Assembly: GCF_032062105.1 (NCBI RefSeq)
Contig: NW_026925526.1
Span: 124,001 to 188,000, forward strand
DNA from: Saccostrea cucullata
Lineage: Eukaryota
Direction: 5' to 3'
Length of the DNA stretch: 64,000 nt
A program made the translations under genes and the position numbers. Below the pieces are notes generated by a model. That model ran no database searches, was not told where the DNA came from, and was given only the letters and a program-made list of their open reading frames with translations. Shown piece by piece: positions 15,847-26,303 of this stretch. Every line of letters starts with the position of its first letter. Positions within the stretch are counted from its first letter, which is position 1.

Positions 15847-16209
15847 TTACTGCACGTGTGAATGACAGTGACAGAGGTGATGGTCGCACGTGGCATGATG
15901 ATCAGGCTCGCACGTGCAGTCATACGGGTGGTTACACTCGTGAGTACTATGGTGACAGTGACACTTTCCCTGGTGGCAGTGGGGAATCAGATGAGTGGCG
16001 CATGTGCAGTCAGCATCTGTCACACAAGTGTCCTTTGACAGTGCTCCCACTGAAAATTACATTTAAAGGGCAAATGGGATTTTACTATTTTTTTCGGTCA
16101 TCATAATAATATGGTTTTGTGGAAGAATCCCATCATATGATGGCAAGACAAGATTTTTTAACTTACCCAACGAAATACAGAGAAACCAGAAAGCAAGAAA
16201 GTTCCTCAT
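15847..16209 (-). CDS. Secreted His-rich 12-Cys protein, cvSI-2/I84 serine protease inhibitor-like (paralogue 1, 81 aa)
   Basis: Exons 16167-16209 and 15847-16049 with a GT-AG phase-1 intron. Protein: MRNFLAFWFLCISLVGALSKDTCVTDADCTCATHLIPHCHQGKCHCHHSTHECNHPYDCTCEPDHHATCDHHLCHCHSHVQ. Hydrophobic signal peptide; 12 Cys and 15 His in the mature part. Confidence 0.85.
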
Positions 16210-17539
16210 GGTTACGTGTAATAAAGTACAATGAACTCAGAGGAATAAAACAGCCATGCACGTACTAGTAGAGATAAGATAAACATATTTTCGAAGTCTA
16301 GCCTTGAGAACATGCTGTCCTTCACGTTTCATTCAAATTAATCATGGGTACAAAGGTACTCAGTAAATAAGTTAGTTTTAATCTGAAGGAGATTGATAAA
16401 AGATTTAGAACTATTATTTATTTTAAAGAACCATTTTGTTTGATGTTGCTTACATTTTTCTGAGATATCATAAAGATTATAAATATTCTTATTTTGCTAT
16501 AATTTTAAAATAATTGCACATTTACAACTTCAACAAAACACCTTATACACCCAAAAGTTCTTTTATGAATGAAGTATGCAAATAAGCTTTAATTGTACAA
16601 GACCTATGATTTACTTTTTTTTTCATTTTCAAAGAAATATTGAATTCTTTGAATGAACCTGACTTTCGAATCACGAAATAAGGATAAAATCGACATCATA
16701 GCAATAAAGCGCCATTAAAACAATACAAATTGAGAGCAGGGCAAACACAAACCCCAGAAAACATCAGAGGTGGGATCAGGTGCTACGGAAGAATAAGCAA
16801 ACCCCTCATCTATTTTGCAGTACATGCATATACATTTATTAATAGGTAAGGGACATACAAGGCAGAGCAACCCAGTTTTCAATCTTAAAAAGTAATGATT
16901 TTTAAAGTTCTTATAGAAAAGTTAAATCTAATATTAAAACGTTTTATTCGTTCCACCTTTTCACATCTGATTCCACTTATCATTGGATTGTGTCAAATGT
17001 TTCAGCAACATATGTCATGATATTTAACTGAAAATTTGAGAAAATATAAAAACTTCAGGCACCTGTGTCCACCTTGAATGTTCTGATCAGGTACACAGAA
17101 CATTATCTAATTACTGCTATCCTTTACCTATAATATAGCTATTCATTAGAAAACAATCGGTATAAAATTGATATCAAAAATTATATTTTATTGTAAGAAA
17201 CATCGTATAGAGATACTTCAATATTCTTCTATTGAAGATGAACCAGAAAATGATATTTTCGAAAGTCTTTTTATCCTAATGTTTGATTAACCTTCATATC
17301 ATACTTCTTCGAAATAACACTAGTTGTTTTTTTTTTAACTTGCAGTTAATTATGACTCGAACCTACTGTTGAGAAAAATATTAAGAAACAAACACACTTA
17401 CAAAGTCATCAATGTTGGTATCTAATTTCTAGGAAAAAGCTATCATGATCTCAGAAATGTCATATGTAACATTTTTTTTTATTGATCGCCTACATACAGT
17501 TTTATATCTCCTACTCAACTTGTTCGATACTCATGAAAA

Positions 17540-23600: not shown

Positions 23601-24431
23601 AAACAATCTAAAGAAGGTTCGCATGATTTATTAATTTATACGCTAGTTCACTCGTCTGTCACGTTTTTGTCTCCCTCAAAATCCTCTTTTATTTTAAGAA
23701 GCAAGCAATTCATTTTCGGAATGTAATAAATGTTTGGTGCCCTTATTTTCAAATTTTCTATAGTGGCCAAATGGAGGTAAAATGCTGTGTTGGTTTAAAA
23801 AAATTATTTACAACCTCGAAAATGACATTTTCTAAAAAAAACATTGTTCCCAATATCCCTCTTACATTCTTAAAGTAGCCTAATATTCTTTTGGATGCTG
23901 ATTGTTGGTGTACTATACTATAGAGGTGAAGTAAGGTTTCGGACATTTCATTTCCAACTTAAGACCCTTTTAAGGGTTGAAAGGAACATTTGTCTTCAGA
24001 AGTCTGGTTCATAGAATTCCTCTTTTATCTGAAAGGAGTCAACCCATTTTTGAAAGATGACTCATGGTGTCCTAGCTGTAGATCTGCAAGAAGGTTTCGG
24101 AAATTTAACTTTCACTCTAGTGGGTCAAATGAGGTGTCGAAGATGGTTCTATTTTTATTTTCTATACGAAGAAAAAGTACACTGATTCCTAGAACTCGTC
24201 TTACTATTTCGCAGTAGCCATTACATCCTTTGGATAATGCTAGGTGGTCTCATTCAGATGTGCAATAGGCTTCTGTATTTTTATTTTATTTTTACCTGTA
24301 GGCCAAATATTATCATGGTATTACATTTTTTTTTCCAAACGAACCGTTCAACTCCATGAAAAATAGAATGCACTTGCAAAAACATTTCAAACTTTACATA
24401 GGATTTGTTTTTAATTAAGTCAATCTTTTAA

Positions 24432-26303
24432 TTAGACAGGATGGCAATGACAGTGATGGTGGTCACAGGTAGGTGTTTCGTTGTCAGCACAGGTGCAGTC
24501 GCTGGCCTGGTGACACTCGTTTACATGGTGACAGTGGCACGAGCCTCCATGGCAGACGGACGTTTGACCATGACCACAGGTTGTTGAGGAGCAGTCAGCG
24601 TCCGATGTACATGACTGACTGACAACTAGTCCTGCAAAAAGGATACATTAAGCAAACTTTGCAGATTGTCTTCAAAATTTGTTGAATAATACTCACATCT
24701 CTTACGTAGTTTATACATCTCAATTGATTCGATAGGCAAATGCATGCTCTACGTATGAACAATTTCTAAAACGATGTAAATTATTGACAAACAAGTTGAT
24801 GAAACAAGAATATCAGCAGTCTCGTTTAAAGTCATCATTTCGTAAGTTCTATGGTCGATACAATGTCCATGTCAGCGAATAAAATTCATAATTAAGTAAA
24901 TACTGACTGACGTTTTTTATACTAATTGTTAGTCCATTCTACACTGAATTGACGACGGATTTTCCCGCTATTTCCCGATCATGACAAAGAGCACACTGCG
25001 GTTGTGACCGGTCGGCAGTAGATGCTCACTCCATTATGGGACCTGATCCCACCTCTGATGTTTTGGAGGCCCGTGTTTGCTCTGCTCCTATTTTGTATTG
25101 TTTAATGCACTTTTGATCTGTTTGTTTTCTCCATAATGTTTCATTTTTACCAGTTTTTACCTAAATATAAATTTATATAAGTTTATAAAAGAGTTTACTA
25201 AAGATGAACAATTTTTAATGCTAACATACATTTCTGTTTAATATTGTCTTACTTCTTAAAAATATGACCTATAATTTTTTTTGCTATTATTAGTTAATTT
25301 TTTCTATATTCAGTAAAAATAAATGCAGTTTTTTTTACTTGAACCCATAAAAGCGTGAGTACGTTAATACCTTTATCGATCTATCTCAAAGGAAAAAAAG
25401 ACATTTATAATCTTTCTTTAAGTTATTCACATACTAGTACGTACATGAAAAAGGTGCAAAAATGCGAAAACGTGTTACACAAATGGAAGAAACATGCAGC
25501 TATTATAAAGGGTATGTCACTCTATTCCCTATAACAAACTTTTGGTTTTAATTATTTAAAAGAATTCTGATTTTTATATTTAAAATGCATATGGTATAAG
25601 CATAGCGGTATAGCATGGTGGCAAAATGTGACTGAAAAGTATAAGACTATTTTATAGGACATTAATTCCAGTCTGAATTATCGCTCTTACCAGAAGAACA
25701 AAGAGCATTTACCCTTGGTTTTAACTATGGTAGTTAAGAAGTTATTTCTTGTTACTAATATAGGCGTTACAGCAATTTAATTTTTATTGTAAGAAAAAGA
25801 AGAAAATATTAAGTAGAGGTAAAATTTAATTAAAGATAAACCGAACTGTTGATTACTTTGACATACCTCATGTTGTCAAGTTCATGTTATTGAACTGCTT
25901 TGTCAAATATCTTTTTTTAAGTTGTCTAACTACTGTTCCATTTTCTTTAATTCTACTTTTAAAATTTCTTCATGAAGTGTTAAAATTGAAGTCAAATAAA
26001 ACACTTAATGCTTTTTTTTTAATATATAAAAACAAACTTTTTTGCAAAAAAAAAGTTAAAACAGTTGTCTAAAAATGATTTTAAACTTTAAGAAATTAAT
26101 CAAATTAATTTCCTTTTGTATTTCAACAGCAGAAGACTTAAATTGATTTTGGAGAAAACTTAATATTGTTTTGTTATACATACCATCATAGAAAAATAAA
26201 TTGAAACTGTTTTTCTTTAATGAAACAAAACATCAAATCCTATTCAAAAACTAAAGTACCTACCGACCACACAGGCAAGACAAATGAGAAAAATTGCTTT
26301 CAT
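24432..26303 (-). CDS. Secreted His-rich 12-Cys protein, cvSI-2/I84-like (paralogue 3, 79 aa); absent from the ORF track
   Basis: Exons 26264-26303 and 24432-24631, phase-1 GT-AG intron. Protein: MKAIFLICLACVVGLVVSQSCTSDADCSSTTCGHGQTSVCHGGSCHCHHVNECHQASDCTCADNETPTCDHHHCHCHPV. TATA-rich stretch at 26344-26360. Confidence 0.85.
24700..25140 (+). mobile_element. Penelope-like 3' fragment inside the intron of paralogue 3
   Basis: Close match to 5590-6020 (ttattgacaaacaagttgatgaaacaagaa...). Confidence 0.65.

What the first reader, a model, noticed from the sequence alone, without database searches (positions are those of the whole stretch)
15847..26303. Cluster of three secreted, extremely His-rich 12-Cys miniproteins: protease inhibitors or an extracellular metal-binding system
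Seen: three same-strand genes of 79-88 aa, each with a signal-peptide exon, a phase-1 intron and a mature domain with 12 Cys plus 15, 9 and 11 His, ending CDHH(L/H)CHC. The third gene is missing from the ORF track. Known: a secreted 12-Cys framework characterises oyster cvSI-1/cvSI-2 (MEROPS I84), which inhibit subtilisin-type proteases including that of Perkinsus, and oysters hyper-accumulate Zn and Cu. Inference: if the Cys are disulfide-bonded after secretion, the clustered HxH/HH motifs form a free metal-chelating surface. This may be an I84 sub-lineage repurposed for Zn/Cu handling, nutritional immunity or metal-crosslinked matrix.
Basis: partly seen in the sequence, partly recalled or inferred. 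Interest (0 to 1): 0.8.

Follow-up and report, generated by a model that had tools for sequence, protein, structure and literature searches.

The report
Three secreted His-rich 12-Cys miniprotein genes
Three neighbouring, expressed genes of a bivalve encode tiny secreted proteins full of cysteine and histidine; they belong to a mollusc-wide family whose one studied member is a pearl-mussel shell protein, and which resembles the oyster I84 protease inhibitors without being shown to be one.

Summary
Three minus-strand genes (81, 88 and 79 aa) each have a signal-peptide exon, a phase-1 intron and one exon carrying 12 Cys plus 15, 9 or 11 His. RNA reads show the predicted splice for genes 1 and 2.

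The mature part is two copies of a 6-Cys module. An exhaustive profile search found 25 relatives. Every one that carries a species name is a mollusc. They include Hic7 (a nacre matrix protein of Sinohyriopsis), RefSeq "Cvsi-1-like" and "Cvsi-2-like" entries, and multi-module polyproteins. About seven His columns are conserved across bivalve orders, so the His richness is ancestral to this clade and not an oyster novelty.

I84 membership is not shown. The cysteine array fits at 9 of 11 spacings, the first intron matches and the second is absent. No true cvSI sequence could be obtained for comparison.

My best reading is that disulfide-locked beta-hairpins display His ladders that bind metals or switch charge with pH outside the cell. 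That mechanism is inferred. Protease inhibition remains a live rival.

The parts
16167..16209 (-). G1 exon 1: ATG plus 14 codons of hydrophobic signal peptide and the first base of a split codon
   Evidence: Sequence read. Donor GTAAGT and frame check. Reads begin near 16204 and join to exon 2.
16050..16166 (-). G1 intron, 117 nt, phase 1
   Evidence: GT..AG in the sequence. A 117-nt skip appears in 27 RNA reads of runs X1-X3. The aligner places it 2 nt off the canonical site, which a synonymous change at 16168 in the expressed allele would explain (inferred). Depth on the intron is near zero.
15847..16049 (-). G1 exon 2 (coding part with stop): end of the leader plus a two-module domain with 12 Cys and 15 His
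   Evidence: Covered by RNA reads and by high-depth contigs of run X4. dN/dS is 0.19 against the C11806 copy.
19856..19898 (-). G2 exon 1: signal-peptide exon
   Evidence: Sequence. Molecules end at 19888 and join to exon 2.
19761..19855 (-). G2 intron, 95 nt, phase 1
   Evidence: A 95-nt skip with CT..AC ends on the + strand, which is GT..AG on the minus strand. 16 reads in X2 and 3 in X3.
19537..19760 (-). G2 exon 2 (coding part with stop in the window allele): 12 domain Cys, one leader Cys and 9 His
   Evidence: RNA depth reaches about 40. dN/dS is 0.06 against the C11806 copy.
19426..19534 (-). G2 downstream intron, 109 nt. In the expressed alleles the TAA at 19539-19537 reads AAA, and the frame runs two more codons into the next exon
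   Evidence: Joints 19425/19535 (CT..AC) and 19426/19540, and the change 19539 A>T in all covering reads. Translation of the continuation.
26264..26303 (-). G3 exon 1: signal-peptide exon
   Evidence: Sequence, donor GTAGGT. It is 100% identical (40 of 40) in the C11806 copy, and the 115 nt upstream are 99% identical, against 93% for the intron. Not tested with reads.
24632..26263 (-). G3 intron, 1632 nt, phase 1 (predicted)
   Evidence: GT..AG and frame. The Magallana gigas orthologue P0004 (79 aa) has the same build of leader plus domain. No read evidence.
24432..24631 (-). G3 exon 2 (with stop): two-module domain with 12 Cys and 11 His. Its first module has the I84-like C-X5-C-X4-C spacing
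   Evidence: 78% identical to P0003 and 69% to M. gigas P0004. dN/dS is 0.16 against the C11806 copy.

Best explanation
These are three old, expressed, tandem paralogues of a mollusc-wide family of secreted miniproteins.

Build. Each protein is a signal peptide followed by two copies of a roughly 30-residue 6-Cys module with the array C-X5-C-X1or4-C-X7-C-X4-C-X-C. The family includes the nacre matrix protein Hic7 and the RefSeq 'Cvsi-like' entries. It is I84-like in build but forms a separate His-rich clade.

Proposed mechanism (inferred). After secretion the twelve Cys form disulfides that lock each module into a short turn plus a beta-hairpin. Cys and His alternate along the hairpin strands (C-H-x-G-x-C-H-C-H and C-D-H-H-x-C-H-C-H). 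The Cys therefore point inward, and three or four conserved His, with neighbouring Asp or Glu, lie side by side on the outer face. Such His-x-His and cross-strand His ladders are a classic geometry for chelating Zn, Cu or Ni. They also make the protein switch from about -6 at seawater pH to +4 to +9 at pH 5.

Proposed role (inferred). I propose that the proteins act outside the cell as metal-binding or metal-bridged components of secreted material such as shell matrix, mucus or plasma.

Shown: the genes, the splicing of G1 and G2, expression, purifying selection, family membership and the conserved His columns. Inferred: disulfide bonding, surface His ladders, metal binding and the site of action.
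For: - The gene models and counts are.
- Spliced RNA was seen for G1 and G2. Exon contigs in run X4 have word depths of about 3,500-9,000 against zero on introns.
- dN/dS is 0.06-0.19 between the window copies and the C11806 copies.
- A profile search of 1.84 billion representatives gave 25 hits. Every named one is a mollusc. Hic7 (P0014) scores E 4.9e-8.
- Hic7 peptides were detected in the nacre proteome and described as carrying CH-rich low-complexity domains (bioRxiv 10.1101/2022.09.07.507049).
- Across 27 domains from four bivalve orders, His is present in 22, 22, 26, 20, 17, 26 and 16 sequences at columns 25, 30, 32, 36, 57/58, 60 and 62. All Cys columns are kept.
- The AlphaFold2 model has mean pLDDT 81, with one hairpin per module at residues 21-25/28-32 and 50-55/58-63. 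The side-chain alternation argument follows from these strands.
- The calculated net charge runs from +9.3 (G1), +3.5 (G2) and +4.4 (G3) at pH 5 to -6.2, -6.3 and -7.3 at pH 8.1.
- Relatives exist as polyproteins of single modules joined by His-rich linkers and dibasic sites. The module is therefore the working unit, and His richness goes with it.
Against: - No metal-binding assay exists for any family member in the papers I could reach. The Hic7 paper itself is not held.
His clustering and disulfide pairing are deduced from the strand register and were not measured.
- The tissue of expression is unknown because the runs are coded.
- RefSeq names three relatives after cvSI inhibitors.
- Fold searches gave no significant match that would point to a metal site. 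The best was Z 3.2, and all TM scores were below 0.5.
- G2 has fewer His (9) and replaces one ladder His by Tyr.
Confidence: 0.45

Rival explanations
1. They are true family I84 serine-protease inhibitors like cvSI-1 and cvSI-2. They would bind subtilisin-type proteases of parasites or bacteria tightly, and the His would be incidental or would tune binding.
For: - RefSeq names: 'Cvsi-1-like' for the O. edulis orthologue of G1 and 'Cvsi-2-like' for two scallop relatives.
- They share the I84 plan of a signal peptide, a mature peptide of about 65 aa and 2 x 6 Cys.
- They share a phase-1 intron at the end of the signal peptide.
- 9 of 11 Cys spacings fall within the published I84 array (PMC9198434).
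- They sit in a tandem cluster, as I84 genes do.
Against: - The I84 intron between the modules is absent.
- The C2-C3 spacing in G1 and G2, and the C8-C9 spacing in all three, is 1 residue against 4-5 and 3-6 in I84.
- The most conserved I84 motif, C-T-C, reads C-H-C here.
- No cvSI-1/2/3 sequence was recognised among the 25 hits at E <= 0.001 of the exhaustive search.
- The Crassostrea virginica members of this clade are not named Cvsi-like by RefSeq.
- The only studied relative, Hic7, is a shell matrix protein.
Confidence: 0.22
2. They are shell or periostracum matrix proteins in the sense of Hic7. They would be secreted by the mantle and built into the organic framework, with His serving cross-linking or mineral interaction and no free metal handling.
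For: - Hic7 (P0014) is a clear relative, at E 4.9e-8.
- Hic7 was identified in nacre by mass spectrometry and is listed with the cysteine-rich matrix proteins.
- Transcript abundance is very high in one run, as is usual for matrix genes.
Against: - Hic7 sits on a long branch, and its position relative to the window genes is unresolved.
- Only about 42% of residues are identical.
- Oysters build mainly calcite shells, not nacre.
- The tissue of expression is unknown.
- This reading overlaps with the best explanation and does not exclude it.
Confidence: 0.18
3. They are host-defence peptides stabilised by cystines. The many His would make them cationic and active only at acid pH or with Zn, as with histatins or clavanins. 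The polyprotein relatives would be multi-copy precursors.
For: - The charge switches from about -6 at pH 8.1 to as much as +9 at pH 5.
- Relatives have dibasic sites between modules.
- The genes form a tandem family, and the locus is very polymorphic.
Against: - dN/dS is low, at 0.06-0.19. Many antimicrobial peptide families show diversifying selection instead.
- The proteins are anionic at seawater and plasma pH.
- No family member is reported to be antimicrobial.
Confidence: 0.1
4. They are metallothionein-like proteins in which the Cys thiolates, and not the His, hold metal clusters.
For: Cys content is 16-18% with C-x-C motifs. A weak Pfam match to Metallothio_5 was seen for G2 (E 2.5).
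Against: - The Pfam match is far below its cut-off (8.7 against 25 bits).
- A signal peptide sends the protein through the oxidising ER.
- The Cys register is that of disulfide modules and is invariant across the family.
- The model folds as hairpins.
Confidence: 0.03

Closest known systems
Hic7, matrix protein of the pearl mussel Sinohyriopsis (Hyriopsis) cumingii (QAV56621.1; Zhang et al. 2021, Comp Biochem Physiol B 256:110640, cited in PMC10969987)
   Same: - It has a signal peptide and a 12-Cys two-module domain of about 62 aa.
- It has C-H-C-H after Cys 5/6, H-E-C-H at the start of module 2 and C-D-N-N-H-C-H-C at the end.
- It was found by the window profile at E 4.9e-8.
   Different: - It is about 42% identical to G1.
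- It has 7 His against 9-15 here.
- Its C2-C3 and C8-C9 spacings are 4 and 3 residues, against 1 in G1 and G2.
- It comes from a freshwater nacre-forming mussel.
- Its presence in shell is shown; that of the window proteins is not.
MEROPS family I84 (cvSI-1, cvSI-2 of Crassostrea virginica; scSI-1 to -14 of Sinonovacula constricta; PMC9198434)
   Same: - It is mollusc-only and secreted, with about 70 aa and 12 Cys in two blocks of six.
- Each block ends C-X4-C-X-C.
- It has a phase-1 intron near the end of the signal peptide.
- The genes lie in tandem clusters.
- Some relatives of the window genes carry RefSeq 'Cvsi-like' names.
   Different: - In I84 a second intron separates the two blocks; here both blocks lie in one exon.
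- Two Cys spacings fall outside the published ranges.
- The I84 motif C-T-C is C-H-C here.
- This clade has a conserved His core.
- Inhibitory activity is untested.
- No direct sequence comparison with cvSI was possible.
Multi-module relatives: M. gigas K1QBD9 (P0021), Lottia gigantea LOTGIDRAFT_177037 (P0005), and the 345-aa frame on C3072 of this genome
   Same: They use the same 6-Cys module with a C-H-C-H-H end, and they are His-rich.
   Different: They carry 4 to about 10 modules in a row. The modules are separated by His-rich linkers and R-R or K-R sites, so they may be cut into single modules. The window genes have exactly two modules and no dibasic site.

Membership tests
MEROPS I84 (cvSI-type inhibitors) | N-terminal signal peptide and a mature peptide of about 70 aa and about 8 kDa | tested here: met
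   Exon 1 of each gene encodes a 13-14-residue hydrophobic leader. The mature parts are about 61-67 aa. No signal-peptide predictor was available, so this was judged by eye and by likeness to P0004 and P0013.
MEROPS I84 (cvSI-type inhibitors) | 12 Cys in the array CX5-8 CX4-5 CX7-9 CX4 CTC X6-23 CX5-7 CX3-6 CX5-8 CX4 CXC (PMC9198434) | tested here: not met
   The spacings are G1 5,1,7,4,1,6,5,1,7,4,1; G2 5,1,7,4,1,7,5,1,7,4,1; G3 5,4,7,4,1,5,5,1,7,4,1. In each gene 9 of 11 are in range. C8-C9 is out of range in all three, C2-C3 in G1 and G2, and C6-C7 in G3. C-T-C is C-H-C or C-Y-C. The published array comes from one clam species, so this failure is soft.
MEROPS I84 (cvSI-type inhibitors) | Three coding exons with two phase-1 introns, six Cys in exon 2 and six in exon 3 | tested here: not met
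   The first intron (phase 1, at the end of the signal peptide) is present. The second is absent, and all 12 Cys lie in one exon.
MEROPS I84 (cvSI-type inhibitors) | Significant sequence similarity to cvSI-1 or cvSI-2 | not testable with these tools
   No authentic cvSI sequence was returned by any search, and the paper's supplements hold none. The only evidence is indirect, from RefSeq 'Cvsi-1-like' and 'Cvsi-2-like' names on P0002, P0019 and P0020.
MEROPS I84 (cvSI-type inhibitors) | Tight inhibition of subtilisin-family proteases | not testable with these tools
   This needs a bench assay.
Hic7 / His-rich 12-Cys clade | Significant profile similarity over the whole two-module domain | tested here: met
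   P0014 (Hic7) scores E 4.9e-8 over profile positions 3-60 in a search of 1.84 billion proteins.
Hic7 / His-rich 12-Cys clade | Conserved His flanking Cys 4-6 and Cys 10-12 (C-H-x-x-x-C-H-C-H; C-x-x-H-x-C-H-C) | tested here: met
   His occupies columns 25, 30, 32 and 60 in 22-26 of 27 domains, and the window genes carry them. G2 has Tyr at column 30.
Hic7 / His-rich 12-Cys clade | Presence of the protein in shell matrix | not testable with these tools
   This needs proteomics of this species' shell. It is shown only for Hic7.
Metallothionein (Pfam Metallothio_5 and others) | Pfam match above the gathering score; cytosolic, with no signal peptide | tested here: not met
   The best match is E 2.5, at 8.7 bits against a cut-off of 25. 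A signal-peptide exon is present.
EB module (PF01683) | Pfam match above the gathering score | tested here: not met
   The three window proteins give no EB match even at E 10. Only the six-module Lottia relative P0005 passes, at 50.5 bits summed over six partial stretches. A distant kinship of the module with EB-like modules is therefore possible but not shown.

The most novel reading that the evidence does not exclude
The 6-Cys 'C-H-C-H' module is a mollusc-wide extracellular metal-chelating unit that has not been recognised as such. It comes in three forms: two-module miniproteins (these genes and Hic7), tandem polyproteins that dibasic cleavage cuts into single modules, and multi-exon chains with His-rich linkers. 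In this reading the family handles or uses Zn and Cu outside the cell, for example to cross-link secreted matrix or to withhold metals from microbes. The I84 protease inhibitors would then be a His-poor sister branch of the same module family.
Probability: 0.25. Interest if true: 0.65.

Novelty: new member of a known kind. Interest (0 to 1): 0.42.

Why it matters
Bivalves concentrate Zn and Cu to extreme levels and build metal-containing secreted materials, yet few extracellular metal-binding proteins are known in them. These genes are small, abundant in at least one RNA sample, easy to express and conserved across bivalve orders, so the metal-binding idea can be tested directly.

The work also connects three labels that databases keep apart: 'Cvsi-like protease inhibitor', 'Hic7 matrix protein' and 'uncharacterized protein'. 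It shows that the RefSeq 'Cvsi-like' names on this clade rest on a resemblance that has not been tested functionally. On present evidence, though, these are further members of a family that already has a described member.

Tried and rejected
- **Pfam on the three domains** gave only noise with E above 1 (preSET_CXC, EpCAM_N, Metallothio_5, Toxin_9). Pfam on 14 relatives gave nothing above cut-off except EB for the Lottia polyprotein.
- **Word-index searches** and the exhaustive profile search did not return cvSI-1/2/3. The supplements of PMC9198434 hold no cvSI sequences. The direct I84 test could therefore not be made.
- **ESM Atlas by features** gave a best score of 0.77, which is uninformative.
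- **Fold searches.** Foldseek against the PDB found no hit at E <= 0.001. VIA-align wide found only the Ascaris carboxypeptidase inhibitor 3fju_B, at Z 3.2 and rmsd 3.3 over 49 residues. The Atlas search by shape gave TM below 0.5 to generic Cys-rich hairpin repeats such as Dicty_CTDC, DUF7107/Dickkopf_N, EB and MopE. None of these is evidence of kinship or function.
- **Complex prediction with subtilisin Carlsberg** was not folded, because the tool does not pair a eukaryote chain with a microbial one. There is no verdict, and I did not try it any other way.
- **The Hic7 paper** is not held. Searches for accession numbers of the M. gigas, C. virginica and Lottia relatives found no paper.
- **Earlier scan notes** held nothing relevant beyond this same finding.
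- **The joined (spliced) proteins** were not sent to any search or fold tool. All searches used exon 2 by reference. Total lengths and residue counts came from a script that worked on the exon coordinates.
- **Plus-strand ORFs** overlapping the exons (for example 15816-16106) were rejected as antisense shadows. The splice ends show that the transcripts come from the minus strand.
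Full report
**1. What is in the sequence**

A six-frame scan of the 64-kb window for frames rich in Cys and His returns exactly three. All are on the minus strand, at 15850-16056, 19540-19812 and 24435-24647, with 27, 21 and 23 Cys+His in the best 60 residues. ORFs of the window as a whole average 3.4% His and 3.4% Cys.

Reading the minus strand upstream of each frame shows a short exon. 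It starts with ATG, encodes 13-14 mostly hydrophobic residues, and ends one base into a codon at a consensus donor (GTAAGT, GTATGT, GTAGGT). A pyrimidine-rich acceptor lies just before the Cys-rich frame. The models are:

| Gene | Exon 1 | Intron | Exon 2 | Protein |
|---|---|---|---|---|
| G1 | 16209-16167 | 117 nt | 16049-15847 | 81 aa |
| G2 | 19898-19856 | 95 nt | 19760-19537 | 88 aa |
| G3 | 26303-26264 | 1632 nt | 24631-24432 | 79 aa |

Exon 2 holds 12 Cys and 15 His in G1, 13 Cys (one in the leader) and 9 His in G2, and 12 Cys and 11 His in G3. The exon 2 frame of G3 has no start codon, so it is absent from the mechanical ORF list.

**2. Expression and splicing**

Three raw-read oligo-dT RNA runs and one contig set of the same species label were laid on 15780-20000.

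- The exons of G1 and G2 are covered and their introns are empty.
- A 95-nt skip with CT..AC ends on the + strand (19761-19855) confirms the G2 intron in 19 reads.
- A 117-nt skip confirms the G1 intron in 27 reads. The aligner places it two bases off the canonical site. That is what one expects if the expressed allele carries a synonymous change at 16168 (inference).
- In run X4 the exon contigs have word depths of about 3,500-9,000 and the introns have none. This suggests an abundant mRNA there, although the tool warns that this is a poor measure.

All reads differ from the window by 1-5%. The differences are partly those of a second genomic copy on contig C11806 and partly private, so the sequenced animals carry other alleles of a very polymorphic locus.

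Two details came out of this:

- In the expressed G2 alleles the window's TAA (19539-19537) reads AAA. A 109-nt intron follows (19426-19534), and the frame ends two codons later.
- G1 transcripts leave the window sequence at 15837 and resume near 15680, which indicates a 3'-UTR intron or an indel.

In the C11806 copy its exon 1 is 40 of 40 identical and the 115 nt upstream are 99% identical, while the intron is 93% identical and carries indels. This supports the G3 model. The M. gigas orthologue P0004, a 79-aa protein with the same leader-plus-domain build, supports it too.

**3. Anatomy of the protein**

The mature part is an internal duplication. Two modules share the spacing C-X5-C-X1-C-X7-C-X4-C-X-C, with 9-10 of 28 residues identical between the halves of G1 and of G2. 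The first module of G3 has X4 in place of X1 between Cys 2 and Cys 3.

An AlphaFold2 model of the G1 domain, built with a 27-row alignment, has mean pLDDT 81. It shows, for each module, a short turn followed by a beta-hairpin, at residues 21-25/28-32 and 50-55/58-63.

Cys and His alternate along these strands (H-C-H, turn, x-C-H-C-H). The Cys of a hairpin must therefore face one side and the His the other. This is deduced from the strand register, because I had no access to the coordinates.

**4. Relatives**

Word-index searches found orthologues at 69-78% identity. Among them were an Ostrea edulis protein that RefSeq calls 'serine protease inhibitor Cvsi-1-like' and an uncharacterised Magallana gigas protein.

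A profile of ten domains was searched against 1.84 billion representatives and gave only 25 hits at E <= 0.001. Where names exist they are all molluscan:

- Hic7 of Sinohyriopsis cumingii (E 4.9e-8)
- 'Cvsi-2-like' proteins of two scallops
- proteins of Sinanodonta, Mytilus, M. gigas and C. virginica
- a Lottia protein made of six single modules with His-rich linkers

No Pfam family covers the window proteins.

A tree places G1 with the O. edulis protein and G2 with a separate orthologue group. These two groups form one well-supported clade (99/99). G3 falls with the M. gigas protein P0004 and with P0003 in a weakly supported, unresolved group (75/80). The G1/G2 split, at least, is older than the split of these oyster lineages.

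Copies on contigs C12116 (about 99% identical) and C11806 (93-96%) are haplotigs or recent duplicates. Against the C11806 copies dN/dS is 0.06-0.19, which indicates purifying selection.

**5. The histidines**

Across 27 domains from Ostreida, Pectinida, Unionida and unnamed samples, all twelve Cys columns are kept. One sequence has a single exception. His occupies column 25 in 22 sequences, column 30 in 22, column 32 in 26, column 36 in 20, columns 57 and 58 in 17 each, column 60 in 26 and column 62 in 16.

His content ranges from 7 to 15 per domain, and G1 is the maximum. His richness is therefore a conserved, ancestral property of the clade. G1 has added more on top of the shared core.

**6. 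Is it I84?**

According to PMC9198434, I84 proteins have the following features:

- a signal peptide
- about 70 mature residues
- 12 Cys in a stated array
- two phase-1 introns, with six Cys in each of exons 2 and 3
- inhibition of subtilisins

The window genes share the overall plan and the first intron. They fit 9 of 11 spacings. They lack the second intron and replace the conserved C-T-C by C-H-C.

I could not obtain an authentic cvSI sequence through any tool, so the decisive similarity test was not made. RefSeq's 'Cvsi-like' names are indirect evidence of weak similarity. The C. virginica members of this clade do not carry that name. I therefore call these genes I84-like in build and do not file them as I84 members.

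**7. What is known about function**

The only studied relative is Hic7. It was published as a matrix protein that takes part in shell and pearl formation (Zhang et al. 2021, cited in PMC10969987; the paper itself is not held). A later nacre proteome detected it and noted its CH-rich regions (bioRxiv 10.1101/2022.09.07.507049).

Fold searches gave nothing significant.

**8. Best explanation and rivals**

I take the proteins to be secreted, disulfide-locked two-hairpin modules whose conserved outer-face His, together with Asp and Glu, bind transition metals. These residues also switch the net charge from about -6 at pH 8.1 to between +4 and +9 at pH 5. The proteins would act in secreted material. 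My confidence is 0.45.

The gene models, expression, selection, family membership and His conservation are shown. Disulfide bonding, the ladder geometry, metal binding and the site of action are inferred.

The rivals are:

| Rival | Confidence |
|---|---|
| True I84-type protease inhibitors | 0.22 |
| Matrix proteins without a metal role | 0.18 |
| pH- or Zn-dependent antimicrobial peptides | 0.10 |
| Metallothionein-like thiolate binding | 0.03 |

**9. Novelty**

The genes are new members of a family that already has a named member (Hic7) and database labels (Cvsi-like). Four points seem not to be described in the literature I could search:

- these labels refer to one clade
- the clade has a conserved His core
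- the same module occurs in polyproteins with dibasic sites
- the clade differs from canonical I84 in gene structure

These points make a testable hypothesis but not yet a discovery.

**10. Procedure note**

The spliced proteins were never sent to a search or fold tool. All searches used exon 2 by reference.

Noticed in passing
L009:709-1743 (-) = G000:C3072, about 654.2-655.2 kb: A 345-aa open frame in the same genome. It has a leader-like start and one 12-Cys unit. About nine further copies of module 2 follow, each of 33 aa (99-nt period, 7.9 copies at 87% match by TRF). The copies are separated by H-H-P-R-R-A-V, that is, by dibasic sites. It looks like a precursor that is cut into single 6-Cys His-rich peptides. 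M. gigas has shorter counterparts (P0010, P0030).
   Followed up: partly
L010-L012, L015, L018, L022 = G000:C17327, about 172-182 kb (-): A run of short exons, each encoding one 6-Cys module. Each module is preceded by K-R or R-R-R and followed by a His-rich tail (H-H-D-[SG]-G-H-H-P). It resembles M. gigas K1QBD9 (P0021) and keeps a one-module-per-exon layout like that of I84 genes.
   Followed up: partly
window 19425-19540: A stop-codon polymorphism in G2. The window allele has TAA at 19539-19537. All RNA reads have AAA there and splice over 19426-19534 to a last exon that adds one codon and the stop.
   Followed up: yes
window 15661-15837: G1 transcripts leave the window sequence at 15837 and their continuation matches 15661-15680 (2 mismatches). 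This is a 3'-UTR intron of about 156 nt without canonical ends in this allele, or an insertion in the window allele.
   Followed up: partly
G000:C12116 (L002, L003) and G000:C11806 (L005, L006, L008, L024): The cluster is present twice more in the assembly, in the same gene order. One copy is about 99% identical and the other 93-96%, with dS of 0.09-0.24. These are uncollapsed haplotypes or recent segmental duplicates. The RNA reads are mosaics of these and of further variants, so the locus is highly polymorphic.
   Followed up: partly
window 16626-16907, 17613-18035, 18177-18317, 18600-18740, 18882-19163: Stretches between the genes draw RNA reads with many loose ends and non-canonical joints, and very high contig depth in X4. 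They behave like transcribed interspersed repeats. A frame with the motif A-P-D-P-T-S at 16715-16882 recurs twice in the O. edulis locus L023.
   Followed up: no
P0005 (Lottia gigantea LOTGIDRAFT_177037): This six-module relative passes the Pfam gathering score for the EB module (PF01683, 50.5 bits, six partial stretches). The window proteins do not match EB at all. The 6-Cys module may be distantly akin to EB-like modules.
   Followed up: partly
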